The notes: generated by a model not told the origin, from the letters alone. 64,000 nt of DNA from Lytechinus pictus (GCF_037042905.1 NC_087248.1:11284001-11348000); one strand, 5' to 3'; numbered from the stretch's first letter, positions 21,001-53,533 are shown. Numbers and translations: made by a program.

Positions 21001-24000
21001 TGAAAAGTTAGAGAATTTCTGAAAGATAAAGAGAGAGGCAGATACATATAGAGAGTGGTGGGGGGGGGGGGGGAGTTATTCCGCGAGAGAGATGTGGACA
21101 AAGGAAATACAAAAGGAAAATATCCACGTACATGTGAAGAGAGAGAGAAAGAGAGAGAGAGCACAAACATGCAGACTTATACAAACAGACATACATGTAA
21201 ATGCAGTATAGAAGTACATGTATAGATAGAAAAGAGATAGCTCTATCTAGCAACAGAGACTTTTAATGACGGTGGATCTACATGTACATGTATTTTACTT
21301 TGCGAAGAAATGCTGGTGGCTGTCATGGCCATTGAGCGTGGGCAAGTAGGCTCAGGGAGACTTACCCACAGAGGATTAGGTATGTGGGACCAAGCCCATC
21401 CTCCGCCCTAAAAGTGTATGAAGGGATTAAGGGTATGCATGATTCAATCAAGCTCTATATATCACATCATGCTACTCTTTTCAAGGACACACAAGGCTTT
21501 AATCTACTCTCTGTTGCTCAAATATTACAGTGATAGTTCCAGTGTTGTAGCTTTTCAGGATATATATACACATACACGTTGGAAAGAATGTCAACCATGA
21601 AGATAACAGTACATGTACATCTGCATTACAATGTTAATATACTAGTACTCCTTAAATTCTAGCTGGTACATGTACCTTTTCCATATTCAACACAAATATC
21701 CTCAAATATACAAACTTGCCTCTGCTTCCGGTAATCATTATCTCCAAGAATTTATAGGAACTGAAGGTAGCACATACACTATAAACAAGAGCCCTGATTG
21801 TTTCAAAGTCGTCAGCTCAAGCATTTTACATCCTGTGTAGTTCAAAAGATAACACACTGAAACATTACCATATCCTTCTAGAAGATCAACACCTACCCTA
21901 GGTGATAGACCATATCTGCATTTCAATTCATTGTGCTTTAAATGCTGATGCAACATGCGTAGGGCCAACTTGCAAAATGCGCACTGCTGCTGTTGCTTTT
22001 TGCTTTCAATTTTTCCTCACTTTCATAAACTAACATAGCATAAATCGATAATTGATCATATTTTTGCTAACTTCCAAGGCATTGTAATAATAATAATAGG
22101 CATTTGTATAGCGCCATCTATCTAGATATAATATATTCCGAGGCGCGTTGTTATTATTATTATTACCCCGGCTTTAGCACGAGCTGCCTTTCAGCGCTGT
22201 TGCATCGTGCATTGTACAACACAAATAGCGAGTATTCTCATTCCTTCAATGGTACAATATTCATTTCTCATTCGGTGAAAGATAGAAACACTATGTTCAA
22301 TTCGGCTACGCCTTGTGGAATAAATCATGTTTCTGTCACCTCATGTGAAATCTCGTACCATCATACTCATGTCTATTTGCTATACTTTTCACACTGACAC
22401 TGTAGTTTCACACCACTGTGCACCATTGACCTCTCCATTCTACTATTCAAACAGGTATGAACACACGTATCTCTTCGAGTCTCACGTTCTTGCAGCTTGT
22501 GCTATAATTAAGGTGATTTGCCTGTCACCGGCATTGCAAATTACCCCTTCCCTTTCCTCTTAACTCTGTCACGCACTAAGGCATCAGCTGCCATTGGAGC
22601 TCCATTTTCTGTAGAGGTGCAGTTCTTTTCTGCTCATTTCAAGTATTGGGAGCAAGGACAATATTGAAATTCAGACATCCTTTTCAGACTAATGTACATT
22701 ACCTGATGTTTGTACAAATGTGATGATGTATTTGGGAATCTGTATTTGTTTACATGTAAATTTATAAATTTGGTACATGTTGTGGTTGAAGTTGCAGACT
22801 CTCTATTTATGCAATTACATTTTACCATGATGCGCCTTTAATATTTGTTTCTGACATAGTTTACTGTTATCTTCTATATCACGCAGCTTGAAGGCTGAGT
22901 GGCTGTACAGTCAAGGCAAAGGAAGATGGTACCACCCAGGACAACACCTACAACTTGTGCAATACCTCGGCAACACATGCCCTCTCACAGTGGTGTCTGA
23001 GGTATTAAGAAAGATTCATGAATTTCCTGGATGGTAGCGATGAAGGTGTTGGTACTAGTAGATGTTTTGTGACTGTGGAGATGGTCAAAGTGATGATGGG
23101 GATGGTTCATGCTGGAGATTGCAGAAATGTCTATGATTATCGTGAAGGTTGAGAATGTGAGATAGAGTGATGATGTTGGTGTTGGCAATAGAGACTTGTC
23201 AATCGGTGGTCAAACTAGTGGTGGTTATTGCATGCAGTAGTAAAGATATTGGGAGTGATGATTACTGTGGAGATGGTAGAAGTGATGATGGAGATGGTTC
23301 ATGCTGGAGGTTGCAGCAATGGTTATGTTAGTGGTGGTGATGATGGCGATAATTATTGTGAAGAATGAGATTGCTTGAGTGATGATGATGATGGTGGTGA
23401 TTGCAATAGAGTTGGTGGTCAAAGAAGTGGTGGTTATTGCAATAGTAAAGATATTTGGGAGGGATGATTACTGTGAAGATGGTAGAAGTGATGATGGAGA
23501 TCGTTCATGCTGGAGGTGGCAGCAATGGTAATGGTGTTGTTGGTGGTGATGATGGCGATAATTATTGTGAAGGTTGAGAATGAGATAGCTGGAGTGATTG
23601 ATGATGATGGTGGTGTTGGCAATAGAGAGGGATCAGTTGGTGGACAAAGTTGGTGGCTATTGCAATAGTAAAGATATTGGGAGGGATGATTACTGTGGAG
23701 ATTGTAATAGTAATGATTCAGATGGCTCATGCTGGAGGTGGCAGCAATTGTTATGATGATGGTTTTGGTGGTGGCGATAATTATTGTGAAGGTTGAGAAT
23801 GAGATAGCTGGAGTGAATGATGATGATGGTGGTGATTGCAATAGAGAGGGATCAGTTGGTGGGTCAAAGTAGTGGTGGTTATTACAATAGTAAAGATATT
23901 GGGAGTGATTGTTATGATGATGGTCCTCAGTGTTTGATGTATGGGTATGCTGAAGGTTGTGATACAAGTGGGACAGTGGGAAAGATTGTAGTGTTTGTTA

Positions 24001-33000: not shown

Positions 33001-36000
33001 GTGGTTATGTATAATTGTGAATCAAACTAAAATCAATTTGAAACAGTCACAAGACATATGGGTAGTGTGATTTGTTTCAATTCCACCATACATACCAGGG
33101 GGTTGTTTCACAAAATGTAAATTGGGACTTAAAGTCACAAAGTCACACTTACATGTAGTGCCTACATGTATGTGTACATGATATTTAATACACATTTTCT
33201 TGATTAATATACAGGTAAATTGTAATGTGATTTGTTTCAATTTCGTTATGCATGCCAAGCGGTGTTTCACAAAGAGTTAAGTGCCTATGAATAGATGATA
33301 TTTAACTCACAATTTCTTGATTAACATGCAGTAGTGCGCCTCCTCTGAGCATGATTCGACCAATGCGGTGATGCATTTCATACTGTACCCAACTGGGAAT
33401 TTAAGTGAAATTTTTGTGAAACACCCCCCTGCTATGCTCATTCACTCCTGATCTAAATTCAATTGTGTAGGTGAAAACCCTGCAGGAGTGGAAGCAAGAC
33501 GTGGATGGCAGGGACGTACCCCCCTCCGGTGGACCCCTCCCAGTGCCCCCTACCACTCCCTCCATCATCCCCTCACCCTCCCACGGTGATACCAGTGGTA
33601 CAGGATCCCAGTTCAAGGATGCCCAGGATCTCTTTGACACGCCTGCCTCGACCGTCAGGGAAGTCCAACTGGAGAAGACCTGCAGCAGTTTACAGAAGCA
33701 GGTATTATTCAAGGAAACCAAAACCCAAGAAGAGAACCAACTTTATTGGAAAGAGTAAAATGAGGGGAACCATTTGAAACAAGTTTCGTCAAAATCGGTT
33801 ATGAAATAAGCAAGTTATGGAAGTTTAAAAAGTCTTGTTGTACTTTCTATGGGGATCCTCAAATTAGCCACCATACTTCAGAATTGCAGATTTTGTGGAC
33901 AACTCTCTGTTTGTTTTGTACACAAATTTTCAGAATTTACCCCATTTTCTTTCAAATTGCATCTTGCCTCCTTCTGAGCATAACATGTGTCATGAGAAAA
34001 TACAATTCACACCACATATGTCAAGGTCAGGAGGAGATAATGTGAAATATGTAAAATAAAGGGGAAAATCTGAAAAATTTTGTTCAAAATAAATGGAGAG
34101 TTGTCCACAAAATCAGCCATTTTGAAGCATGGTGGCTAATTTGAGGATCCCCATAGAAAGTACAAGACTTTTCAAACTTCCATAACTCGCTTGTTCTATA
34201 ACCAATTTTGATGAAACAAGTTTTAGATTGTTCCTCTCATTTTATTCTTTCTGATAAGATGGATTCTCTCCTTGTATTTTGGTTTCCTTTGATGAGAAGG
34301 CAAGGGCAGTGACCTTAAATCTTGAAGAGGAATCTTGTTCAGTTCAATACTACAAAAGATGTTCTGGCATGACACTTTCATTTGTGATAAATGAACCAGG
34401 GGATGTTTCATGAAGCTAGCTGTTCGTAAGTTTGGAGCGACTTTACAAACGACTGGTGAACCACCTTTCCTCTGCGCTAAACCATCGCCAAGTGAACATT
34501 TTGGTGTATACCATTTACCACAAGAAAGGATCACCAGTCGTTCTTAAAGTCGCTCTTAACTTACAGCCAGCTTTATGAAACACCAATCCGATCAAGGAAT
34601 ATTGTAGGATCATTCTTAGGAATATGTCATGAGAAATAGTGATTTTCACGGATTATTTTGCTCTGAGCCAATCAGATGCAAGGATTTTAGTAGCTTATAA
34701 CAAATAGTCAGTGAGAATCTACTAGTGTTTGTTTCACGAAATGCTCCATATCCGATCAATGTTTTAGCATTTCCCAAATTTTCAGGGAATGGAGGAAAAG
34801 TTGGAATTAATTGAATTAACTGATAATTCTTCTTTGAGCATTACAAAAGTGCAGACTAACTGGTAGTCATATTCTCTAAATCACTTTTATCTTTTGTTTT
34901 TTTTACTTCATTTATGAACCATGGATTCGATGAACTGTATACTGAGAGTATTGCCTCTTTATCTGATATTTGAGAAAAAAAAAATTGTCGCAATTTCTGT
35001 CAATATGTTATTCATGTGGTGTGCAAATTGAACTAATCTTAGCAATTCTATGTTCTTGAGACAGGTTGGTCGCCTGCAGGAGTCGATTAACAGCATCACA
35101 ACCTTCATCACCTCCGGATATGTGACCAACCCTTCAACTCCATCTGCACCCTTCCCTGCCACCCCTCTTCCTGCTAAAGACCAATCGCTCACCCAGCCAC
35201 CATCACAGGCTGCATCCAAAGACAAACCCTCGTTGGTAGCATCAAAGTCAAGTCCATCTCAGATCACCTCCAAGCCATTCTCGGATGGGAAGAAGAGCCC
35301 ACAGGGAAATATCAATACCAACAACGCAGTACCAGCTACTGCTGGTAGCGTTGGAGCGACTCAAGGGGTCACCCTGCCTGCACCATGGGAGGGAGCGATG
35401 ATCAACCAGGCGCTGAACAACCTTCCAGAAGGTCTGCATCCATTAGATGTGCAACAGCTTCTAATCAGTGCAGCAAAGTGGATGTCGGAGCAGGCAGGTA
35501 TTGCAGGTAACGGAGGAGGAGCAGGAGCAGGTGGAGGAAGCAGTAATGCAGATGCCACCAGCCAGGCTACTCAAGCCGCCCCTTCAGTCATCCAGGCTGG
35601 ACATTTCCTACCAGATGAGAAGGACCAGGAAGACGCTGAACCAAAAGTAATCATCATGTTGTTGTATTTATTCAATCCCTTGAAAACATGTTGAAAATGT
35701 CTTAGATCTATTTACTTTATGTATATATCCCAAACTTTTGATTTTGATATGAACTTAAGGGATTCTCTTTGCGTTTGAATACAATAACTCATGAACCGTT
35801 CCATTTTCTACAACCCACCTACATTTTATCCATACATGAATTACCATGAAAGTGGCAGTTCATTTCTGAATATTGTTCTTTCAATAGCAATGCTCACTTC
35901 TGCTACTGGACCTCCTCCTTTTTAGTTAAGAGTTACAGAAAATGATGGGTGATAGTTCCTTGTGTAACCTTTTCCCTTTCTTCCCTACAGCCAACAGCCC

Positions 36001-39000
36001 CCACGGAGCTAGTTGCCACAGCTCGCTCAGACACAAGCATTGCCCTGAAGTGGAAGCCGTCATCCATGCCTGGTGAGGAGGGTGGGGCAAGGCAGCTCAT
36101 CAGTCCCATCAAGGGTTACAAGCTCTTCATTCAGCTGGGAGAGAATCACAGAGAAGTGATGGATGTGCCCTATCCACAGGCCATCCTGGGGGGACTTACT
36201 CCAGGATGTTACAGGTCAGGAACATGTCATGGTCTATCCTCCTTTTTGCACATGTTGCTATCATGGTGTTCATTTATATTATGTTTGGTTAATTATATTT
36301 GTTTTTGAGGTACAGTATTTGTTCATTATATATAGTTGGAATCTGTCATGAAGGCCAAAAGTCTCTGCAGTTCTGTCCCATTTTTGAACTGCTGTATTGA
36401 TTTGTTTAGACAACAATGTATCTTTTGGAATCATTCTCTGTTTTTTTTTTCAGTTGAATGGTTTAAAAAGAATTGTATGTATAAATTTGAACCTAAATAT
36501 TAAACCAACCCTTTCAATAAGTCATATTCATGGACTGTACATTTTGATTTATTTCAGTAAATTATCACAAAATAATGTTTTCTGTTACATTTGCCGGGGG
36601 TCTCATCTTCATGAAATATAGGGAATGTTATTTTGAATGTTATATATCCATTGAATTATTTTTTAAACAATTCTTTGTGATTATAGGTTCAGAACTGTTG
36701 TGAGCTTGTTGATTATTATAAACTTTTAAATATATTTTCATATCCTTAATTCTTTATTTTATATTTAGTACTGCATCTATTTTATTTGAAAGATAAAACG
36801 TTAAGGTTGTATTGCTTCAATCTCTTAATTGACACAGACTTGCAAATGACTTTTGTTTGGTACTTTTTTATATTTTTAGATTTTCTGTTCGGGGAGTTGG
36901 ACCAAACACTGAGTCTGATGATTCAAATACAGCCGAGGTGACATTGCCTCAATCTCCACGGGCCAAGAAGGCATCCCCTGCAGAAACTCAGAAAACAAGT
37001 CCAGCAAAGCAACGTCCAGTAGCCAGTCCAAGGAGCAGCAAGGAGAACCAGAAGAAATCCAGTTCAAAGACATCCTCAGAAGCTTCCAAGGAATCCCCCA
37101 AGAAGTCTTTGAGTAAGAAATCCAGTGGCTCTTCAAGCAGAGGGGATGCTTTGAAGGACAAGTCCAACATCGGCAGTCAGAATGCAAAGAATGATGCTAA
37201 GTCAGCAAGAGAGTCTACTAAAGCAGGGAATGGAAAGCAAGTTATGCAGCCTGCTTCTGTCAAATCAAAAAGAGAAACAGACATCGATGCTGAGCCCTCT
37301 GTTGTGGACCTTGAGGACGGTTTGAAAGTGGCCATTGCCAAGTCTGTTGGAGTTGAGATGAGTCAACATATAATTGACACTGCTATCCAGATGGCCATCA
37401 TTGCTCTTATTGATGTTGGTCCTGATGTGGAAGGAGCCAATGCCATTGAGGAAGACAAGAAAAATGGAGGTGGTGGAGCAATTGAAGTTGTCCCTGTCCA
37501 AAAACTTGAAGCGTCGTCCCAAAAGGAAGGTCCACTGGTGGTTAACCAAAGTAGCGTAGTAGACGGACATATTGGTGAGAAAGCAAATGATGTGCAGGTT
37601 TTGTCTAAGATAGTGAAAGAGGGGTCGGGTGAGTGTCAAAAGGGTAATGGTTGTAGAGCCGGTTTAGGGACTGAAAATGTAAATGAAGCAAGCAAGTGTA
37701 ATGGTGTTCAGGGTTTAGATGATACCTCAGGTGTAAACCTTTTGTGTAATGGGGACTCACAGGGTAGTGGCAACAATCAATCTTTACATTGCAATAAGAA
37801 CAATACACACACTGATTCTCCTTCCAACTCAGAATCACAAGTGAAAGAAAGCGTTCCTCAGCCTGAATCAGCAGGGAATGGGTCAGAGCCAAATCAGAGT
37901 TTAGGGAGCGTTGCTGAATCTTCTAAACGAGTTGAACAGCTCTCCATGAAAGCGACAGAAGAAACAGTGTTTAATTTTGACTTCCAAGGTGGGATCCCCT
38001 ACCCTCAATCCCCAACAGGAATAGCAGAGATTGCCACCTCAGAAAAGTTGTTAGTTGTGTCTGAACAGAAGGATGCTCCTGTCAAAAGTCCAAAGCCCAA
38101 ACCCAGCCCTCGTTTGTCAAAACTGGCAGCCAATTTCACTTCAAAATCAGCCAGCAGTAATAGTGCAAATACAATGACTGAGATAAGCGAAATGGATGAA
38201 TCACACAGGGTGAGTGTAGGTCATGATCCTTTTTCAGTGGACTTTGAAGAGTCCTTGCCTGTGAGTGATTGTGATGACAGTGATGATAGGACAGTCAATT
38301 TGAGGTTGGGTGAGGGCAAAGCTAAGAGAGTGGTGAGTTCATCAAGCCTTGAAGACAGCAGAATGTCCTCAGATGAAGCATCTCCTAGCGACCACAGTGC
38401 TTCCTCCAACAAATCTTCCAAGCAGACTGTCTCATTCTCTCTGGCTCCAAAGCCCAACAAGCCCAAACCCAAAGAGGCTCCTGTATGCGCCAAACACAGC
38501 GAGGAAGCCAAGACAAACAACCGCTCCAAAGCAGGAGATGGCACGGAACAGAACAAATCTGATGATAGGCCAAGCAGAGCCACACGACCTACCAACATCA
38601 AGACAATCCTCAGCCCTATAAACTCCCCAATGATGCAGCACAAGTCTAGGAGTAATGGCGGGTCAGGGATTCCGATGGTCCGAGTACCCTCTCCAACCAA
38701 AGGTTTCTTGAGGCTTGGTGGCGGTGTCCACCGTACAACTAGTACCCCGTCCTTGGAGATCTTGAAGAGTCCTGGGGGTAACGGATCAAACGGAAATGGC
38801 AATGGCCAGGTAATGCCATAAATGCATGATGAAGTATCACGATTTGGAATCATAAACCCAGTGCATTTGTATGAATGTGCATGTAGTACTACATTTAGCT
38901 ATGAACTCGTCTTAAGTTTGCACATTGATCTCTGCACAGCCAGTATTATACATGTAGACTATTCCATGGATATGCTACATATGTACATATGTGGCTGTTG

Positions 39001-42000
39001 GATTTTCCCTTTTCGTGATACAGAATTCAACCTTGGCATGAAAATAGATCAAACTAGCTTGATTAAAAAAAATGAGTGATAAATCGCTGTAAACGAAGTC
39101 CCCATCTATGTGACAAAACAGCTATAAAAGGAGAGAAATCGACTACAAAGCAGCTTCAAAATTATAAGTTGCTCACGATTTCTAGGAATTCTTACTGAAA
39201 AGAAATAATTTTGTTTTTAATTTTGAATTAAAGAATGTACTGCGCTGCTACAGCAAAGCTATAAACCAGATGACATGTACGTTCAGTAACATGCAAATTG
39301 ACGAAATATTCTCAACTGGATCCAAATCAATGTAAAAAAATGATGAACAGTAGGATAGGATGGTCTGTAATGCCCCTTACCAATTGAAAAGGGAGTATTA
39401 TTCATTTCTAATCCTCATTCTAAAACACAATGGGAAATGCAAGAATGTTGCTGTGAGAGATGTACAGTCCTTTTGAATCCAGCTATAAAGACCTTTTGGG
39501 CAGTATTCATAAAAGAGCTTCCAATTCGGTGGATTCACAATACGGTGCACCATCTTTCGGTTGCAGCGGACAGGAAGAAATCTGCAATGCCTTGTGAGAA
39601 AAGGTCGACATGTTGCGGGTGCTAGTTCATGGATGCAATTATGCTGTTTACCAGGGTCCAGGGGGTGGGAGAGAAATTTGCTGCATATTTCTCTTCGAAA
39701 TTTAGATCGTTTTGGGTGATTTTTTTCTGCGCTTTTTCCATATTGCTTTCAGTTTTGAAGCATCACAGTCACATACAGTACACTAGCACTGCCTGCACCT
39801 GCGCACGATGTCAACCCCAAAGTTAGAAATTTGCCTGTCTGCGGTAACTGAAAGATGGTATACCATATTGTGAATCCACTGAATTGTACCATGGTACAAA
39901 ACCATGGATTATGCAAATTTGAGTTATCCCTTTTCATTTAAGCATGAATTTAGCTCCCAAAAGCACGCAATTATACTTGGACTATTCTGAGTGTACATGA
40001 TAAGCGTAATTAGTTTGAAAGTTTGAAAGTGGGGATTTTTTTACCTGATTGCTAAGAAAGCATGAATGCTTGTAAGCAAGCAACCAGAGGACCGACGGCT
40101 TAAGGTCCTCTCCGAAGGACCTGGTAATGAGGATTAATGCCTTACCAAAGGGCACTAGCGCACCAAGTGTGAATCGAACCCGGATCACCGGAATACGAAT
40201 CCCCCGCTCTACCGACTGAGCTATCGCGCCTCCGCATTATGTACACCAAAATCTGCATAGTCCATGGTGTTGTACCATGGTACAATTGAAACCTCTTTTG
40301 AGAACACAGGCCTGAGGCCCGTATTCTGAAGTCAGCTTTAACTTAGACCATGGTCTAATTCTGTGCTAAAATTATGGGGAGCCAAAAACTCAACATTTCT
40401 GCTTACATTGTATATTTCTTATATTTACTATTTTGCTTCCCTTTGTTTTTATAATGAAGAAGGTATTTCAGTCATTCTGAGACTGTTATAATTGATATGT
40501 GTGTCATAATAGTTAATACATTTAACATGTACCATTAAATAGAGATTGGTGGCCCAATGGCTCTCCATAGTTAAACCATAACTTTAAACCAGGGTTTAAT
40601 TTAAACCATAGTTCAGAATACGGGCCTATACTGTATGTCCTTTTCAGGTGGCATTCCCACATTTCCTTGTTTGGTTTATGATGAATTTTAAGGGATGGCA
40701 GTAAAAAGATGCATGGAGAATTCTTGTGTGAAAGTTGTAGCTCTTACTTTTGGTAGGCTGCATGAATAGTCTAGGATTGAATGAAAACATCTTTTGCATG
40801 AGTCTAATTTGAATGCTATATTGTTGAGCATGACTCAATGCAATTAATCATGGTAATCATCCCTACAGTCAGTCACTAGCTCTATGTTACAGGGCCCTGG
40901 TGAGTGTTTCATAAAGCTGTTCGTAAGATACGAATCACTTTACGCATGACTGGTAACCCTTTCTCATGCCAAGTGATATCCCTATGTAATTGAGTTAGGA
41001 CCTAAGATCATGTTCCAGTCGATCGTAAAGTTGTGCTTAACTTTACGAACAGCTTTATGAAACACCCACCTGGAGGCCGTTTCATAAAGCTGTTCGTAAG
41101 TTAAGAGCGACTTTAAGAACGGCTGGTGATCCTTTCTTACGCGCTAAACCATCGCCTATGGTGTATACCATTTACCACAAGAAAGGATCACCAGTCGTTC
41201 TTAAAGTCGTTCTTATCTTACGAACAGCTTTATGAAACGGCCCCCAGGTCTTTTTTGCAATAGATGTACAGAAGATGCATAGTTTACCAGCACACCGCTT
41301 ACTGAGTCAAGTCATATACATGTAGTTAATTATCCCTATCCAATTTAAATTGATGTCTATTATAGCCAATGACATTGATTGAATTTTGATATCAATTTTA
41401 CTTTCATTATCAATTTTTGTTTCATTTTCCATTTCTATTTCACTTCTAATTTACATTTATATCCAATTATTCAAATTAAAATCAAAATCATATTCAAAGT
41501 CAAGTCAAAGTCCAAATCCAAATCTTTACCAAATGCAAATTATCAAGATTTAAATTTGAATAGGCCTCCATAGTCAAGTTTAATTCCATTTCATTTCATT
41601 CAATTCTGATTTATTCAAAGATTACACAATACTCTAGTATTTTTCCTTCCTAAGTCACTTCATATTTTATTGATATAGTGAGTTGTACATGAATTTTTAA
41701 CTTATTTTTTACCCATGTTATCTGAGGGCCCTGTGTTGCATTAAATTACATCATGTATTAATTTTTGGTCCTTCATACAGTTACAATAAACAAATATATC
41801 AGGCTTTGAGAAAGTATAGTGGAATTATTTATTCGAGGTTGGTCTGGCAATTACTATTTTTCCCGAGGGGCGAAGCCCCGAGGGAAATATAGTAGTTTTG
41901 CCAGTCCAACCGAGGATTAATAATTCCCACTATGCTGGACTTGCCCGGGAGAGAGAGCGCGCTGGCCGGTACGCCCGAGAGTTTAGCTCATAGGTTTAGC

Positions 42001-45000
42001 TAGATATCCAGTTTTGTGAAATAATGACGTCAGACCTCGATATATCCAAAAATATATCGAGGTCTGACGTCACGCAACATCATAGTTGAAATATATTCGG
42101 TCACATGATGCTACTTGAACCAATCACTATACAGGATTTACTCAATGTAGGATATAATATTATTTGTAAATTCGAAACAACATATCTGGGTAAAACAGTA
42201 CTTAAGTGTCCTGGCAAGAGTTTCTCATGTCACAAATTGATTAAAAAACCTGTAAGGGGGGGGGGAGGATAAATCAGCCCCAGTCTCTTCAGGATTGGTT
42301 TTATTTCTTCATGCAGTTCTTGTCTCTAGAATTTAACAGTGATTGGTTTGTATGTTACCAATGCAATGGGCCATGTTGCAGAATTGCACCTGTTCCCGAC
42401 AGTATGATCAAAATGATTCCAATGTTGTAATCTACAAGATGATTGTATCCTTCGAACAGACCTCTATGAATGCCTGCAGCAGAGGATATCTATATATGGG
42501 CAACTTAAAGGGACAGCAAACTGATCAACACTGTGTGGTTTCTCATTGGTGGCATGTTATTAAAGGACAAGTCCACCCCAACAAAAAGTTGATTTGAATA
42601 AATAGAGAAAAATCTAAGAAGCATAACACTGAAAATGTCATCAGAATTGGATGCAAATTGCAAAATAAGAAATTTATGACATTTTAAGTTTCGCTTAATT
42701 TCACAAAACAGTTATATGCACTTACTGGTTGGTATGCAAATAAGGGAATTGATGACATCACCCACTCACTATTTTGTATTTTATTATATGTAATATGAAA
42801 TATTATAATTTTCTTATTGTATGTCAAACTACATGTACCATTACTAGTACTTTAACATTTTATGGTTCAGTCAAGTTGGTCCTAATTGTAAAATCTGTAA
42901 TAATTAGAATATTGTATAATTCAAACAGTAAAATCAAAAGAAATAGTGAGTGAGAGATATCATGGACTCTCATTTGCATGTCACCAGGTTGTGCATATAA
43001 CAGTTTTGTGAAAAATAAGCAAAACTTTAAAATGTCGTAACTTTCTTATTTTACATCCACTTTTGATGAAATTTTCAGTTTTATGCTTTTTTAATTTTAT
43101 TAAAATCAATTTTTTCTAAAGGTGGACTTGACCTTTAATGGCTAGTCTTGGAATATACCTTTTGAGATAACCATTTATAATACAGAGAATAAATTAGCAT
43201 TATTTGTATAGAGAAACCAAAATGTTCATGAGAAGAACATGTTTCAATACTACTTGGTAATATAATTACTGTGATATGAATGGATTAAGTAGTGAATTAG
43301 CATGTTATTATTCAAGTGGGCCTATTCTACAAGACTACACTGCTGAGAACATTGCATTATGGGGTAGGAACCTGGCTAGATTTAAGAAGTTGAGGACTTT
43401 AGCTGGTGCTGTTAGTGCTGCTGGTACTCCCTTCAACATTTACTTCCTGTGCTCCGGAAATAAAAGCCTTGCAGCTCTCTATCATAATGATGCCCTCAAA
43501 GATGGTGGAGTTGTTTTCCGTGGGGTCCACTGATAGATCCACTGCGAGGGCCTTGTGGCCGCGGGTTGTACTGTAGCAGCCCACGTCCTCATGGACCAGG
43601 GAATATGGGTATTTACAGGTTTCCGTCAGGAACCACTGGTTCAGTCCGATCTCGCTGAACTGTTCAAAGCAAAAATTATTGGAAGACCATAAAAATGACT
43701 GTAATGATGATGATCCATCTCGTTTTGTCACATTGGAATGGTTTTTTTAGCACTGTAGAGATGTATTATTATCCGGTCATTGGGTTCTGAAGTAATAACT
43801 ACATGTGATTGATACAGAGTTTTTGCACTGAAATGCATGAAGATTCCTAGAACCGTGTTTCGTTCTTAAATCAACAATTCATAGGGTTTTTTTGGGGGGT
43901 AAATGATCTTATGGTATCAACAATAAAAATTTTGAAAATCATAGGGGTCCTTTTTGTAATTGCTCAAGGGTTATTTGTTGTCATGTTGACATTTTGGGGG
44001 TAAAATTAGATGGGCCACCTTTTTTTATTTGGGGGGGGGGGGCTACTTTTCACTGACTACTGCCTAAATTTGAAACATTAGATATTATAAGCTTTAACAT
44101 TGTACTGTAGGGAATGGGGATTTTTTGGCTCTTTTTATATCTTTCTCTGGCTTTTTTGAGAATTTCAGGGCGATATCACCCAAAGCCTTGTGTAAAGTTA
44201 TTCTGTAAAGAATCCTTCCTTACACCCCTATGTATGTTTTTAGCTTATGATTTTGCTATTACCTGAGGAAGTTGTACCAGCTTATTGTCCGATGTCAATG
44301 CAATGTCAATGGCCTTTGCGTCTATTATACTTTCACACAGAGGAGCAGATGTAGGGCCCCTCTTGACTCGAGCTGCACCATTTGACCGGGTCCTGCCCCG
44401 TAGGGATCTTTTCCTGAATAAAAGAGAGTTGGTGATAGTTGATAATAGTGGTGATGATGATAATTTCTGCCCGAGTTGAGTGCCGAATATCTTGTGACCA
44501 CAAATATCAGAGAGAGGTACATGTTCTTAGGTGCTACATATAGGTCAGCTACATGGGGATTTATCATTTAGAAGAAGAAAGGGTTACCAGTCAAGCATAT
44601 TGATAAAGTCATTTGAAACTTACAAACAGCTTTATGAAAAGGCCACCTTGGGGTGTTTCACAAAAAGTTACATACTGTAAGTAGGACTAACACGATTATT
44701 CAACTCAAGAATAGACCAATTTATGCAGACTTTCAAAATGGTATATTACTGCAATACCCTGATTTAATCTTTACTTTCCTGCACATGGTGTATCCATTTT
44801 TCTCTGAATATTCCAGGCAGAGTTTTCCATGGTGGAATAATCAAGTATGCTTCATTTAGATTGGTTTTCAGTGTTTGTGTGTTTTGATTCTGACATTGTA
44901 TGAATTCTTTCTGAAATGATATGCATACTCTTCAGAAAATGTTTGCAGTTTTATTGCACACCTCCCACCAATTAAAGTTCTGAGAGAGTATCTCTTTGAA

Positions 45001-48000
45001 TTCAAGGGTGACCTGTGACCTGTCCATCGGGAATGCTGCAGAAAATGCGATGCACTCATGGGTGCAAAGAATAGTTTGAGCAAAGAACAAAGGTCCTGTT
45101 TCTTAAAGACTTGATATACTAACAAATGCATGATTTCTATAACAAATTTACTATCAGCCAATCAGATTGAACAATTTCAGTAGCTTTCAACTGTTATTGC
45201 TCATTTGTAGTTTTATGAAACGGGGCCCAAATGTTGTCTTCTTGAACCGTTTATCTTGGTGAAGATTAACCTTAGAATGCACATATATGCTAAACCAACC
45301 CAACCTTATTGAATTTTTCACGCTGATATCACTTAGCAGCTTCACATCTCGAGACTGGTCTTTGAGTGTCCTATGGGAATCCCTAATGGTGTTAGCATTA
45401 GCATCTCGTCTCTTTCTCCGCCGCCTTGAGTCGCTTCCACTGCTACCGGAAGAGCCATAATTTCTCCATTCATAGCTGCGACTGCCACTGCTACTGCTAC
45501 TGCTACCTCCGTAATATCTCAAGATACTGTCATGGGTCTTTTCCTGTTGTTCACCAGAAGTACCTGGTGAAGATGAATCATCGAAAGAATCGCAGAGCTT
45601 TAAACAAGATTTAGCAGAGACTTTGTAGTTACAGAATTCAGGTTTAAGAACATTTATATCTCATATATTTGTGGAAATCATCCTTGTTTTAATGAGCGTT
45701 TGATATTTTGCAAGAGTTGTTTTATAAATAAAGAGGGATTTCACAGGATGTAGTCCAAAAATTGTGGAATAACTTACAAGCACGCTTACATTCTGCTTCA
45801 TCAAGAGAATCTTTGAAGACAAAACTAAAGAATTATTAATAAAAAAATCTAAAGCAAAAATGTGATATATTAAAGAAAACATAACCATGTCACTTTGAGA
45901 TTTAGAAAGCAACCCCCCCCCCAAAAAAAAAGTGCCTTCATGTATGCCTGTGCATTCCTTCATTTTTACACACTATTTTTTTGTCATGAGGAAACCTTAG
46001 TATTGTCCTTTGCATAAAATGCCTTCATTCTAACATTTTTCAATATCATGGTTTTAATGATCATCTTTAAGAAATTTTGTGTTACTGCATGTCATGAGAA
46101 TTCCGTCAATGAAAATTTATACAGACTTCTGGTACCACACTATCGCACCTGCTCACCTGCATCATCATCAGTTCTTCCCGGATTATTATCCAGGAATTCG
46201 TCCAGTTTCTCTTGATCCACTGGGTCTAAAAGTGACTCTGTCGGGACGTTGACCCGTGTTGCTGTTTCCTCGAGCTCAGTTGCCTCTTGGCTGGTGGAGA
46301 AGAACCCCCCGTACTGGGCCAGTATGGAGTCCCTCTGGTCGTTATTGAATTGGATAACGCAGGCTCCTTCTAGTTCTTCATCACCATGCAGTAGCTCCGG
46401 GTTCTCCTCCAGCATCTTGATAATCTGTATGGGATTGGCATAGAGTTAGGGTTGCCAGGATGATATTTGCGTACTATGACATAAAAGTATTCTTTACAAA
46501 TTTCTATATATCCACAACTTTATATTTTTACAGCCAGTTGTCTGAAGGCTTGGATGCAAAAAAGTTCTGAATGTCAACATTTCATTTTATTACTTACAAT
46601 GTAGGATTAAGTCAGTGCAATATTCTACATTGAGTAGAATATGAAATTAAGATATGAAACCTGAGATTAGTAATGTTTTATGTACATGTACACATTAGTA
46701 CACATTAGCAGTCTTTATTCATTTATGATGCTTAAACTTCAAAGGAAAAAATTAAATGAAAATTCAAATTTCGGCAAAAATCAAATGACGAAATCTGATC
46801 AAATATTAAAAGGTTTCAAGTAACATTATCCTTTGAATAGACCAGCTCAGAGTTATCTTGTTGGCAAGTTTTCTCACATAAAAAGGCAAATTTCGAAGAA
46901 AGATATTATGTAAGGTAAGCATGTCTGACATAGCAGGATTCAGAATTTGCCTAAATCAGGTGACTAGAATCGCATTTCAATAAACTCTTAGGGGTTTAAG
47001 TTATTTGTTGCATTTCTACTGAGGATGCATGTTGTGATTGCATTGTAAAATACCAGCCACTAATGGACACGTTTATGCTTTACAGTGGATCTAATGAAAA
47101 GCACAATATAAAAGCATAGGTGAATAACCAAGACCTCATAGATAACGCTAATGTCGTTGAATATTAAACCACCATGCCCTTTGAGTTCCAATAACCCTTT
47201 TCTGATCATGCACAGAATGGAACCATGAACTGGGTCCTGTAACACAAAGGTTAACGATCGATCACATGCTTCATTTTCACGATCGATTATACATTGTGGT
47301 CAATGCAATCAAGTACACAGATTTTCTTCTATGACGATTGCTAAGCTTTGTGTTACGGGCCCCCACTTGTTTAAACCTCACCTCTTCGCTGTTGAGAATG
47401 GTCTCAATCTGTTCGTCCGTCAACGTAAGCCTCGGGTGAGTGTCGTCTTTCGGGCAGAAGATTTCGCAGAACTTATCTTGAAAGAAATTGCCCCGTGCAA
47501 AGTTTGTCCGCTGCCCTGTGACCCCCGGCAGCCCCCCACCATGGCAGATTGAGAGGATGAGGACAAGGACAAATCCCAAATCCTTGTACTCCATCATGGC
47601 CTCAACCCGACCAATACTTTTCCTATCTCTCTCCTCTCCTCTTATGCGAATAATTACCTTTCTATTCAAGTTCCAAGAAGCCGGCAAATTATCTCTGATA
47701 TCCCTACAACCACATCACTGTGCTATGAGTATACAAATGTATAATTCCAGTCAAGCCTTTGCTTTGAATATAGCTCCGTCTTTATAACGAAACAACAAAT
47801 GAAGCCACAGATTTGGCAAGGTGAAACAATCATAAATATTATGCCCCTTGACCAAGCATAGATTATTTCCAGTATACAGCATATTTATGAGGACTTGTAG
47901 GATTCCTATTGATTATTTTTCTGAAGGGGATGCTGCAGAGATTGATTTTTGCCACATTGTGTTGCAAGGTGTCGGCTCTGTGTCCTTGAGCCTTATAGTC

Positions 48001-51000
48001 ATACAGCAAATACTGTGATAATCCTAACATCTTTCTCTCTATTTACCGCACTTCCCCAAGCTGTGAACTTCCGGGGAGAGCGGTCGTGCAGTAGCATCAG
48101 ACTTTACGCATAAAGATATAAATATACAGTCATACTTTCATCAGCCTTCCATCAGGTTTTAAAGGCCGCATTTATCTATTCCCCTTCAATGCAGTTCTTC
48201 TTGTGGTGTTTACCAAAGGAATGCAAGTACAAGCTGTAGAACCTGGGTATGAAGACCACTTTTCTCGTGATCCTCTGACTGGCCTTTGTACACAGTTATG
48301 CCCTTTTTGTGTGTTGTCGGATGGAACAGATGTAAAGGGCAAGGTTGCCTAGAATACTGATTGGGGAATTTCAGAGTTGTTGGGAAAAATGACCATATGA
48401 TGAACTATTAATATTTATAATCAATTGTACATTTTTTGGGGGGTACGTGATTTGCCAGAGACTTTAATCTTAGTTTGATATTAATTTTTCATGTCCTCCA
48501 ACATTTTCAAGGCCTTGGATTGAGATTTAAATGTGAATGAAAAAGATGGCTTAATTATATCAAGATGCGTGATAACTGAATAAATAGTAAGATAATAGAT
48601 TGATGCAATATTTAGTCACTGTTAGATCATAATAAAGTTTTTTTTTATGAAACTGCTCGACCAGATTTATATCTTACTAGTGGTTCCATGACATTTGCTC
48701 CAGCGACAATTGCTCCTCTATAAATTCCACACACTTATTGAATAACTATAAACTTCAACACTGAATTTATCACTATACCACACCCAAACCCTAAACCTAA
48801 CATAAAACCCTATTGCAAAGAAATAAAGCCCGTAGCCATTGTTTCATGAACAAATGTCTCCCATATTAGTAGTCTTCTTGAATCTACATCTAATATGAGT
48901 ATGTAACCTGAAAGTAAAGGGTCGCATTTTTGTAGTGCCGAGTTAAAACAACAGATTTGTAGAGCCATTGTTTTCCAGTTGAATCGTACGCGACTAGTGG
49001 AGACTAGTACCCAAGTGGAAATTTGTGGTGAGCTAAATTACGTCAGATTAGCGCCGTGACGTGTGAAAAATAAAATCAATATGACCAGTACCATTTCCAG
49101 TGAAAACAATACAGTGCCTGCAGGGGTGGTGCCATTAGCGTACACAGGATTTTTGAAAGGGGGGGTAGAGTTGAATGAAAATTTGACAAGCAAATGTAAA
49201 AAAAAGGTTTTTACCCCCAAAAAAATTAGAAAAATTACGTCATCTCGTAACCAAAAAAAATTGACAAGCAAAAAAAAAAGGTTTAAACTAGTTTTCAGAT
49301 CTGATAACTTTCATTGATTTTGATTGGCTGAGAAGCATTGTTACTATGGTAACTCGCATAAAACAGGACTTGTCGGATCTGACAAATCCTTTCATTTAAC
49401 GCTCTCCAGGAGTAGTCTTTGAATCCTGAAACCTCTCTGATTAAAGAGTCGGAACTAATTCACAGTACAGATGCCTCCATGCATTTCTTGTCTTAAAGGG
49501 ATGGTCCAGGCTGGAGATATTTATATCTCATTAAATAGAGTAAAATCCACAAAGCAAAATGCTGAAAATTTGATCGAAATTGGACGACAAATAACAAAGT
49601 TATTGAATTCCAAAGATTTGCATTATTCCAGTGAAACAGTTCTAGGCATGTCCTTAGGAATATTTATTAGGTGGGCTGATGATGTCCCATCCCCACTTGT
49701 TTTTTTCTTTTTTATTATATGAAATTAGGTTTATTCAAAATTTTTCTATCAAGAACTAAAACTATTCTAATTGACAACTGATTATGTGCATTAGTCATTT
49801 ATTGCTGCAACTTATTTCATCATAATAGAGACACATCATATACACATGTATGAAAAAATGAAACATTTATGATTTTATGTAATAACAGAAGAAAAAGGAA
49901 AGTGGGGATGTGACATCATCAACCTACCTAATGAATATTCATGATGATGTGCAGATAACTGTTTTCACAAAATATTGATAAACTTTAAAATTCAATAACT
50001 TCGTTATTTTTTATCCAATTTTGATGAAATTTTCAGCATTTTGCTCTGTGAATTTTACTCTATTTATTTAGATATACATGTAAATATCTTCCGCCTAGAC
50101 CATCCCTTTAATGAATAAGTTACTCCCTTCTTGTTTTAACTGTTTTATGAAACTGGCCCCAGGTTTTGATCAATTTAAATTGGCTATAAAATTTGAAACC
50201 AGTGTGGGATCCACTTGAGTCTGACCCCTCTGGTAGAAGTTTACAGCTGCTTATTCATTTAGTGTATGCATGCACTACGAAGCTACCTATCCCAGATTTG
50301 TACTTGGCATTGAAACACAACATATGTGTGTACAATGCAAATTACAATCAGAGTCATTTCCTTTCCTCCAGATTACCTTGATTTTGTTCTCATTTCTCAC
50401 ACTTGAAATACTCATATTAAACAAAAGACCGGTAATAACTTGGTTGCATGCTTGTTATGAATACATGCATTTTGTTATAAAACCCATGGCAGTTTTTGCA
50501 TGTACAGTGGTGCTGAAAAGTTAGTGAACCCCACCAGAAAATAAATAATTCAAAGGTGTTTAAGTTCTGCCATGTTTTAGATATTTAATTGTGAAGTCAG
50601 GTGATAAAATATTACATTCAATAGAGTTTCTCTGGGCCCACCGAACATTGTTGCATTGTTGTCTATATTCAACACTCGGCATGAAGGAGTGCATTTTGTG
50701 GTGGAGTTCACTAACTTTTGAGCATAGAAGTATGAAACAATATTTTCAGTCATGCCTGCATTGACATTACAGTGCAAAAATATGTATCATATTCGTAACT
50801 CTGATATTCTTAGGTGTTTTTTTTTTAAATCTATTATGCAGGAATTTTGTAATTTCTGTGCTTTTATTGAATTTAAAATCAACTTGCAGTGAGGGTGAGC
50901 TTCCCCTTGGAGAACAAAGATGACTGATGTGACATTAAGATTATAAATATGTATTTCACAAAAGTATGTGTATCTCTAGCGAATGTCATTTTGTGCTGCC

Positions 51001-53109: not shown

Positions 53110-53533
53110 TGTTGAGGACAACTTCATTATTCACCAACCGGGAGCATAATTTTGTGCCTACATGTACTTTGATGCATTGAGCTTTAGCTATCAAGTTTAA
53201 AAGTCTGTTTGTACTCGCATGTATATGGTGAAAACATTATGTCTATTCCTGGTGCAATGTTGGGGGATTTTTTTACACCTGAATGAGGCTTCAGTTAGTG
53301 TTTTATGAATCGTACGTAATTCCCAAAATTGTACAATTTATGCCACAAGTGCCGTTGACATGATAAGGAGACCAGTCATGCCTTTAGCATGATACACACT
53401 ATGCAAAGTTTGTTTATATCAAAAGTTTAATTATGCATGTACTCAGTGTTTAGGGATTTACAGTGCTTGCATGAGGTGAAGGCTGATGGTGTGTGTAGTC
53501 TTTCAATATGTGCACTTCCCGTTCTGGTTCTGG

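What the first reader, a model, noticed from the sequence alone, without database searches (positions are those of the whole stretch)
43399..44355. Neurotrophin/Spaetzle-like domain missing exactly the CysIII-CysVI disulfide pair
Seen: after RVKR the spliced product reads [32 protein letters not shown]|[69 protein letters not shown]. Known: NGF-family knots use C15-C80, C58-C108 and C68-C110 (I-IV, II-V, III-VI), with motifs VCDS, ATD.KGKEV, QYFFETKC, CTTTHTFVKALTMD and IRIDTACVC. Here those motifs line up ([44 protein letters not shown]). However, the GCRGID loop carrying CysIII is shortened away and the terminal CxC has become CxA. Inference: both partners of one disulfide were lost together while the ORF stayed intact. 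That points to a functional 'unknotted' neurotrophin-fold ligand rather than decay, possibly an undescribed subfamily whose receptor (Trk, p75 or the expanded echinoderm TLRs) is unknown.
Basis: partly seen in the sequence, partly recalled or inferred. Interest (0 to 1): 0.9.

Follow-up and report, generated by a model that had tools for sequence, protein, structure and literature searches.

The report
Four-cysteine neurotrophin-like gene of sea urchins
This is an intact, conserved sea urchin gene for a secreted, protease-processed protein whose end domain weakly but significantly resembles invertebrate neurotrophins yet has only four of the six knot cysteines, so it may be a natural "unknotted" growth-factor relative, though its fold and function remain untested.

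Summary
The window is Lytechinus pictus. The five-exon minus-strand gene (47597-43399) reproduces NCBI's "uncharacterized protein LOC135153874" exactly. It encodes a signal peptide, a long pro-region, RVKR, then a ~100-residue domain with four Cys ending C-x-A-F.

Positional orthologues in L. variegatus and S. purpuratus keep the same exon phases, the same four Cys and the same Ala codon. The domain is under purifying selection (dN/dS 0.04 within Lytechinus, 0.24-0.36 to Strongylocentrotus). It is therefore neither decay nor an assembly error.

Neurotrophin kinship is only partly supported:
- Pfam NGF and Spaetzle, PDB sequence searches, two AlphaFold runs (pLDDT 42-46) and Foldseek gave nothing.
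- A profile I built from eight published invertebrate neurotrophins scores the domain 10-13.5 bits (single-test P about 6e-5 to 5e-6; 0-3 of 20000 shuffles reach it). The match runs colinearly from CysI through QWF-x4-CysII. The C-terminal half alone is not significant.
- A Spaetzle profile gives P about 0.03.

Which cysteine was lost cannot be decided from sequence. Deleting the CysIII-CysIV loop with either cysteine gives the same sequence. No relatives were found outside these three urchins.

Verdict: probably a very divergent, urchin-restricted, four-cysteine neurotrophin-like ligand. The fold is unproven.

The parts
47382..47597 (-). Exon 1. It holds the start codon, a signal-peptide-like N-terminus ([22 protein letters not shown]) and the best conserved stretch of the pro-region, with Cys44 and Cys48.
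   Evidence: The gene model reproduces P0001 exactly. Sequence read. Identity is 73% to S. purpuratus and 96% to L. variegatus. The signal peptide is judged by eye; no predictor was run.
46157..46424 (-). Exon 2, pro-region, with conserved Cys94. The donor is phase 1.
   Evidence: tblastn to S. purpuratus L001 7352-7663.
45305..45563 (-). Exon 3, pro-region. It has a Ser/Gly low-complexity stretch and a conserved polybasic site RRRRKRR (residues 208-214, window 45426-45406). The donor is phase 2.
   Evidence: The site is present in all three species.
44263..44413 (-). Exon 4. It holds the end of the pro-region with [23 protein letters not shown] is at 44370-44359, the mature domain starts at G267 (44358-44356) and the first Cys (CysI) is at 44337-44335.
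   Evidence: RAARVKR is conserved in S. purpuratus.
43660..44262 (-). A phase-0 intron that splits the mature domain nine residues before QWF (LPQ|FSE). It lies at the same place and phase in S. purpuratus and L. variegatus.
43399..43659 (-). Exon 5. NQWFLTETC carries the second Cys at 43617-43615 (CysII). The third Cys is at 43578-43576, 12 residues later. The last Cys is at 43473-43471 (CysV position). Ala stands in the CysVI position at 43467-43465 (GCT). An S/T-rich tail and the stop codon follow.
   Evidence: Conservation. Match to the neurotrophin profile.

Best explanation
The gene encodes a secreted pro-protein. Shown: the precursor has a hydrophobic N-terminus, a ~245-residue pro-region, two conserved polybasic furin-type sites (RRRRKRR and RVKR) and a ~100-residue C-terminal domain with four conserved Cys. 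It is conserved, correctly spliced and under purifying selection in three camarodont sea urchins.

Inferred: a furin-type convertase cuts after RVKR and releases the C-terminal domain as an extracellular ligand. That domain is a very divergent offshoot of the neurotrophin (NGF-type cystine-knot) family. Relative to urchin neurotrophins it differs by an in-frame loss of the CysIII-CysIV loop together with one of those two cysteines, and by Ala in place of CysVI.

The four remaining Cys most likely form two disulfides: first with third (like I-IV) and second with fourth (like II-V). The ring disulfide of the knot would then be gone. The receptor and the biological role are unknown. The very slow change of the domain within Lytechinus, against its fast change between genera, fits a ligand that shifted together with a partner.
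For: The gene model equals the NCBI protein.

Orthologues are positional. Flanking host-gene exons are 79-88% identical in DNA, and the exon structure and phases are the same.

The four Cys and the GCT Ala codon are conserved in all three species.

dN/dS of the mature core is 0.04 (Lp-Lv, 7 synonymous and 1 non-synonymous change) and 0.24-0.36 to S. purpuratus. The tail is about 1.

The custom neurotrophin HMM scores Sp at 13.5 bits (P 4.6e-6) and Lp and Lv at about 10 bits (P about 6e-5). The alignment starts at CysI and runs through V.V.Q and QWF-x4-CysII. In 20000 shuffles, 0-3 reach these scores, also when the Cys positions are kept fixed.

In the reciprocal search, five of eight neurotrophins reach P <= 1e-3. 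The signal survives leaving out either the ambulacrarian or the non-ambulacrarian sequences.

Accepted remote homologues score in the same range: neurotrophin HMM against Spaetzle gives 9.6-25 bits. The best of 431 real ORF decoys scores 5.2 bits.

Pfam NGF itself sees the published Sp-NT2 at only 13.3 bits, below its cut-off of 27. A Pfam miss is therefore weak counter-evidence.

Spacing fits a loop deletion. There are 12 residues from CysII to the next Cys, against 11-13 to CysIII in the urchin neurotrophins. Ala stands at Cys+9, as it does after CysIV.
Against: Pfam gives no hit to NGF, Spaetzle or IL17 at E <= 10. PDB sequence and profile searches find no neurotrophin.

Both AlphaFold models are unreliable (pLDDT 42.5 and 45.8). 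Foldseek returns only noise.

The C-terminal half alone does not match the neurotrophin profile (P 0.1-0.17). hhalign gives only P about 0.002-0.003, with probability 5-11%.

The neurotrophin hypothesis was chosen after the sequence was seen. Scaled to all 24736 Pfam families, the P values would be E of about 0.1-1.5.

Conserved neurotrophin residues such as the Trp six residues after CysI are absent.

The profile rests on eight sequences that I translated by hand from a published nucleotide alignment. Two of them were checked against Pfam.
Confidence: 0.55

Rival explanations
1. It is a lineage-specific secreted pro-protein or pro-hormone that is unrelated to neurotrophins. The resemblance (a Cys just after a furin site, a QWF...C motif, beta-rich hydrophobic patterns) would be chance or convergence.
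For: Exhaustive protein searches find no relatives outside three urchins. There is no Pfam, PDB or fold match. The similarity is confined to about 50 residues and is not database-wide significant. The N-terminal pro-region is better conserved between genera than the presumed ligand, so the active product might lie elsewhere in the precursor.
Against: The match to the neurotrophin profile is colinear and anchored at CysI and CysII. It is reproducible in both directions and with disjoint subsets of neurotrophins, and shuffles almost never reach it. The precursor architecture and the size of the domain are those of neurotrophins.
Confidence: 0.3
2. It derives from another cystine-knot cytokine family (Spaetzle, Trunk/PTTH, or an IL-17 of the invertebrate type that lacks disulfide 3/6) rather than from neurotrophins proper.
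For: Invertebrate IL-17s that have lost the 2/5 or 3/6 disulfide are described (PMC11087794). Neurotrophin and Spaetzle profiles cross-hit each other, so a weak hit does not fix the subfamily.
Against: The Spaetzle profile gives only about 1 bit (P about 0.03) against 10-13.5 bits for the neurotrophin profile. The QWF-x4-C motif is the neurotrophin form. Pfam IL17 and Spaetzle give no hit. From general knowledge, IL-17s lack a long furin-cleaved pro-region. Trunk/PTTH and IL-17 profiles were not tested here.
Confidence: 0.1
3. It is a decaying neurotrophin pseudogene, or an artefact of assembly or annotation.
For: None beyond the missing cysteines.
Against: The ORF is intact and GT/AG sites are canonical in three independent genome assemblies. 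The Ala codon is the same in all three and lies two changes away from Cys. dN/dS is far below 1 in the core but about 1 in the tail.
Confidence: 0.03

Closest known systems
Sp-NT2 of Strongylocentrotus purpuratus and acorn worm NTa/NTb (Wilson 2009, PMC2772990)
   Same: They are ambulacrarian genes with a multi-exon precursor and a (N)QWF-x4-Cys motif before CysII. The spacing from CysII to the next Cys is similar (13 against 12). They are barely visible to Pfam NGF (Sp-NT2 13.3 bits).
   Different: They keep all six knot Cys, and Sp-NT2 and NTb have an extra Cys next to CysV. This gene has four Cys, lacks the CysIII-CysIV loop and ends C-x-A. Pairwise similarity is weak (5.6-8.5 bits). It is a separate locus in S. 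purpuratus (LOC100890096).
Canonical neurotrophins (NGF, BDNF, NT3; sea urchin Sp-NT), Pfam PF00243
   Same: They share the layout of signal peptide, pro-region, furin site and a ~100-120-residue C-terminal domain. They are colinear from CysI to CysII with Q-[WY]-F-x4-C, and Ala stands nine residues after the Cys that precedes the third strand.
   Different: They have six Cys. Per Wilson 2009, the precursor is encoded in one exon. Pfam scores are strong (Sp-NT 75.5 bits) against none here. The conserved Trp after CysI and the C-[RTL]-G-I...S-x-C segment are absent here.
Spaetzle / Drosophila neurotrophins (Pfam PF16077)
   Same: They belong to the same superfamily of protease-activated cystine-knot ligands and have multi-exon genes.
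   Different: The Spaetzle profile is not significant (P about 0.03). The P-x-C-C-x-C ending and the Y.Q..R.E.C motif are absent.
IL-17 cytokines with incomplete knots (vertebrate type lacking 1/4; invertebrate types T1B and T1C lacking 2/5 or 3/6; PMC11087794)
   Same: They are a precedent that a cystine-knot cytokine can lose one knot disulfide, including 3/6, and stay functional.
   Different: They are a different family. No sequence match was seen in Pfam. From general knowledge, IL-17s have no long furin-cleaved pro-region.

Membership tests
Neurotrophin / NGF family (Pfam PF00243) | Match to the family profile at or above the curated cut-off (27 bits) | tested here: not met
   No hit at E <= 10 for the exon pieces, the spliced 109-residue domain, or P0001, P0002 and P0005. 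For calibration, Sp-NT scores 75.5 bits and Sp-NT2 only 13.3 bits.
Neurotrophin / NGF family (Pfam PF00243) | Six conserved cysteines forming the knot (I-IV, II-V, III-VI) | tested here: not met
   The domain has four Cys in all three species. One of CysIII/CysIV is missing, and Ala replaces CysVI.
Neurotrophin / NGF family (Pfam PF00243) | The conserved segment between CysIII and CysIV (C-[RTL]-G-[IVL]...[YW]-x-S-x-C; the PROSITE NGF signature, recalled from memory) | tested here: not met
   The segment is absent. Only 12 residues separate CysII from the single remaining Cys.
Neurotrophin / NGF family (Pfam PF00243) | Precursor layout: signal peptide, pro-region, furin-type site, C-terminal domain of ~100-120 residues | tested here: met
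   P0001 shows this layout and RVKR is conserved. The signal peptide was judged by eye only.
Neurotrophin / NGF family (Pfam PF00243) | Colinear sequence similarity to family members, including Q-[WY]-F-x4-CysII | tested here: met
   The custom HMM of eight invertebrate neurotrophins scores 10-13.5 bits, with P from 6e-5 to 4.6e-6 for a single test. In 20000 shuffles, 0-3 reach these scores. Reciprocal and leave-out tests agree. The match covers the N-terminal half only.
Neurotrophin / NGF family (Pfam PF00243) | NGF-type elongated beta fold and homodimer | tested here: inconclusive
   AlphaFold2 on three-sequence alignments gave pLDDT 42.5 and 45.8. Foldseek against the PDB had no hit at E <= 0.001.
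Neurotrophin / NGF family (Pfam PF00243) | Binding to Trk or p75NTR | not testable with these tools
   This needs recombinant protein and receptor ectodomains.
Spaetzle (Pfam PF16077) | Profile match and the P-x-C-C-x-C ending with the extra inter-chain Cys | tested here: not met
   There is no Pfam hit. A custom six-sequence Spaetzle HMM gives about 1 bit, P about 0.03. The ending is S-C-[KS]-A-F.
IL-17 (Pfam PF06083), including invertebrate type T1C without disulfide 3/6 | Profile match to the IL-17 domain | tested here: not met
   There is no Pfam hit at E <= 10. No custom IL-17 profile was available.

The most novel reading that the evidence does not exclude
Sea urchins carry a third neurotrophin-family gene, so far undescribed, whose ligand works without the ring disulfide of the cystine knot. 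It would be the first natural 'unknotted' neurotrophin. It is kept under strong constraint within a genus but was remodelled between genera, as if it co-evolved with a receptor that need not be Trk or p75.
Probability: 0.4. Interest if true: 0.75.

Novelty: new variant of a known kind. Interest (0 to 1): 0.55.

Why it matters
Neurotrophins are treated as a textbook case in which all six knot cysteines are invariant from annelids to humans. A conserved, selected family member with only two disulfides would show that the fold, or at least the ligand function, tolerates loss of the ring, as has happened in IL-17s. It would add a third neurotrophin-type ligand to the small echinoderm set (Sp-NT and Sp-NT2, with one Trk and one p75NTR). 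It would also give a natural test case for what the knot contributes to folding, dimerisation and receptor choice. L. pictus is a genetically tractable urchin, so expression and knockout tests are feasible. If the kinship is false, this remains an uncharacterised, urchin-restricted, furin-processed secreted protein with an unusual rate pattern.

Tried and rejected
The following led nowhere:
- Pfam on single exons, on the spliced domain and on the full proteins gave nothing relevant.
- phmmer and a three-sequence profile against PDB sequences gave only a chance viral polymerase hit at E 1.2.
- The exhaustive phmmer search of 1.84 billion representatives with exon 5 found only the gene itself, the S. 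purpuratus orthologue and a 1952-residue repeat protein (P0003). The P0003 score is inflated by 14 repeats, and I dismissed it.
- Three word-index searches (mature region, family alignment, N-terminal pro-region) found only the Lytechinus and Strongylocentrotus proteins. There were no intermediates to bridge to annotated families.
- Two AlphaFold2 runs, on the full and the trimmed domain, both had low confidence. Two Foldseek searches of the PDB returned noise.
- Pairwise hhalign against Sp-NT and Sp-NT2 aligned only the QWF...C stretch (P 0.02-0.08).
- The C-terminal half against the C-terminal half of the neurotrophin profile was not significant.
- The L. variegatus X2 isoform was not on record for a locus look-up, so I used X1.
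- No paper mentions the gene identifiers or a third urchin neurotrophin.

I considered and rejected pseudogene, assembly error and Spaetzle membership.

Full report
**1. What is in the sequence**

The finding lies on the minus strand. Translating 43399-43659 gives [10 protein letters not shown]...STNSTS-stop. Translating 44263-44445 gives ...[29 protein letters not shown]...LVQLPQ. The junction uses a canonical donor (CAG|GTAAT) and acceptor (AACAG|TTC) in phase 0.

It is XP_063954452.1, "uncharacterized protein LOC135153874" of Lytechinus pictus.

A five-exon model with GT/AG at every junction reproduces that protein residue for residue. The exons are 47597-47382, 46424-46157, 45563-45305, 44413-44263 and 43659-43399.

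The precursor has these parts:
- a hydrophobic N-terminus;
- a pro-region of about 245 residues with three conserved Cys (44, 48, 94);
- a polybasic site RRRRKRR at residues 208-214;
- a second site RVKR at residues 263-266;
- a ~100-residue core with Cys at 274, 313, 326 and 361;
- an S/T-rich tail.

The last Cys is followed by Lys-Ala-Phe. The Ala codon is GCT, two base changes from any Cys codon. The window holds no N.

**2. Conservation**

Only three other proteins in the collections are related. Two are isoforms of L. variegatus LOC121414123. The third is the 168-residue partial model XP_011665789.1 of S. purpuratus LOC100890096.

The S. purpuratus locus is the positional orthologue. Flanking exons of a large opposite-strand gene are 79-88% identical in DNA to the window. 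I could rebuild the full five-exon gene there with the same intron positions and phases.

All three species have the same four Cys in the core and the same C-x-A-F ending with a GCT Ala codon.

Nei-Gojobori dN/dS values:

| Region | Comparison | dN/dS |
|---|---|---|
| Core | L. pictus vs L. variegatus | 0.04 (7 synonymous, 1 non-synonymous) |
| Core | Lytechinus vs S. purpuratus | 0.24-0.36 (synonymous sites saturated) |
| Pro-region | all comparisons | about 0.23-0.26 |
| Tail | all comparisons | 0.64-1.12 |

The four-Cys state is therefore ancestral to these two urchin families and is maintained by selection. It is neither decay nor an assembly error.

**3. An unexplained rate pattern**

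The core is the best conserved part within Lytechinus (99 of 100 residues). Between genera it is the least conserved structured part: 45% identity, against 52-73% for the pro-region exons.

The share of recent non-synonymous change is far lower in the core than in the pro-region (1 of 81 against 28 of 176; Fisher P 2e-4). Synonymous changes show no such contrast.

This fits episodic divergence of the ligand, or a function of its own for the N-terminal pro-fragment. More species are needed to tell.

**4. Is it neurotrophin-like? Standard tests**

These tests give nothing:
- Pfam finds no NGF, Spaetzle or IL17 match at E <= 10 for the pieces, the spliced domain or the whole proteins.
- phmmer and a family profile against all PDB sequences find no neurotrophin.
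- AlphaFold2 with the three available sequences gives pLDDT 42.5 and 45.8.
- Foldseek on these models returns only noise.

**5. Is it neurotrophin-like? A targeted test**

I took the Cys-knot regions of eight invertebrate neurotrophins from the nucleotide alignment in Additional file 1 of Wilson 2009 (PMC2772990). They are sea urchin NT and NT2, acorn worm NTa and NTb, and the amphioxus, Lottia, Capitella and Daphnia NTs. I translated them by hand. Two were checked against Pfam NGF: Sp-NT scores 75.5 bits and Sp-NT2 13.3 bits.

Results with an HMM of the eight, run with all filters off:
- **Scores.** The S. purpuratus domain scores 13.5 bits (single-comparison P 4.6e-6). The Lytechinus domains score about 10 bits (P about 6e-5).
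- **Alignment.** It starts at CysI and runs colinearly through a V.V.Q strand and the QWF-x4-Cys motif to the third Cys.
- **Shuffles.** Of 20000 shuffles, 2-3 (L. pictus) and 0 (S. purpuratus) reach these scores. This also holds when the Cys positions are fixed.
- **Reciprocal search.** A profile of the urchin family hits five of the eight neurotrophins at P <= 1e-3. Capitella is best at 7e-7.
- **Leave-out tests.** The signal survives leaving out either the ambulacrarian or the non-ambulacrarian sequences.

Yardsticks:
- The same neurotrophin HMM scores accepted remote homologues (six Spaetzle proteins) at 9.6-25 bits.
- The best of 431 real ORF decoys from the three loci scores 5.2 bits.
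- A Spaetzle HMM scores the urchin domains at about 1 bit (P about 0.03).

Limits:
- The C-terminal half alone is not significant (P 0.1-0.17).
- hhalign gives only P 0.002-0.003.
- The hypothesis was chosen after seeing the sequence. Spread over all Pfam families, the P values would be E of about 0.1-1.5.
- The Pfam miss counts for little, because Pfam also fails to bring the published six-Cys Sp-NT2 above its cut-off.

**6. Which cysteines are missing**

MAFFT and global hhalign instead put it on CysIII and delete CysIV. Both readings are correct in a sense:
- The 12 residues between CysII and this Cys match the CysII-CysIII spacing of the urchin neurotrophins (11 and 13).
- What follows the Cys resembles the strand after CysIV, with Ala at +9 and K-A-L.
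- Removing the CysIII-CysIV loop together with either one of the two cysteines gives the same sequence. Which one "survived" cannot be decided from sequence.

Because the strand that follows is the CysIV strand, pairing with CysI is the more likely outcome. CysVI would then have lost its partner and become Ala. This is an inference. Only disulfide mapping can settle it.

**7. Mechanism**

Shown: a conserved, selected gene for a protein with a signal-peptide-like start, two conserved furin-type sites and a four-Cys C-terminal domain.

Inferred:
- secretion;
- cleavage after RVKR, and perhaps after RRRRKRR;
- release of a two-disulfide, neurotrophin-derived ligand.

Unknown: the fold, the oligomeric state, the receptor and the site of expression.

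Rivals:
- an unrelated urchin-specific pro-protein with a chance resemblance (about 0.3);
- descent from another cystine-knot family (about 0.1);
- a pseudogene or artefact (about 0.03).

**8. Comparison with what is known**

S. purpuratus was known to have Sp-NT (a one-exon precursor, canonical) and Sp-NT2 (multi-exon, six Cys plus one extra). The present gene is a third locus. It is annotated only as "uncharacterized". It is absent from the searchable literature under its identifiers, and no third urchin neurotrophin is described there.

Loss of a knot disulfide has precedent in IL-17s, including invertebrate types without 2/5 or 3/6. To my knowledge there is none in the neurotrophin family.

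I file it as a new variant of a known kind, with moderate confidence in the kinship (0.55) and moderate interest (0.55).

Noticed in passing
window 35053-38831 and 51173-53117 (+), with the intron at 38832-51172: The neurotrophin-like gene lies antisense inside a ~12.3 kb intron of a large plus-strand gene. That gene's exons are 79-88% identical in DNA to S. purpuratus. Its product is 2143 aa with LRR Pfam hits in S. purpuratus and 2109 aa in L. variegatus. One exon (35949-36305) gives a weak fn3 hit. The nesting is conserved in all three urchins.
   Followed up: partly
window 45406-45426 (-), residues 208-214: A second polybasic site, RRRRKRR, is conserved in all three species in the middle of the pro-region. 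The precursor may therefore yield three fragments, not two.
   Followed up: partly
window 47382-47597 and 46157-46424 (-), residues 30-110: The N-terminal pro-region ([31 protein letters not shown], with three conserved Cys) is better conserved between genera (52-73%) than the presumed ligand (45%). It may have a function of its own.
   Followed up: partly
window 43399-43455 (-), residues 367-384; L001 10650-10821: The tail after the last Cys is S/T-rich in Lytechinus and a P/E/T-rich repeat in S. purpuratus. It evolves at dN/dS of about 1 and looks like a mucin-type linker of no fixed sequence.
   Followed up: partly
L002 7375-7922 (L. variegatus): L. variegatus has two annotated isoforms. 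X1 carries 11 extra residues at the exon 2/3 junction.
   Followed up: no
L001 8718-8900 (S. purpuratus) compared with window 45440-45520: The Ser/Gly low-complexity stretch of exon 3 is expanded in S. purpuratus by SGSNSGS-type repeats.
   Followed up: no
window 22001-24000: GC skew is strong here (0.30), and a His/Asn/Thr-rich repetitive ORF lies at 23434-23967. This is probably simple-sequence DNA.
   Followed up: no
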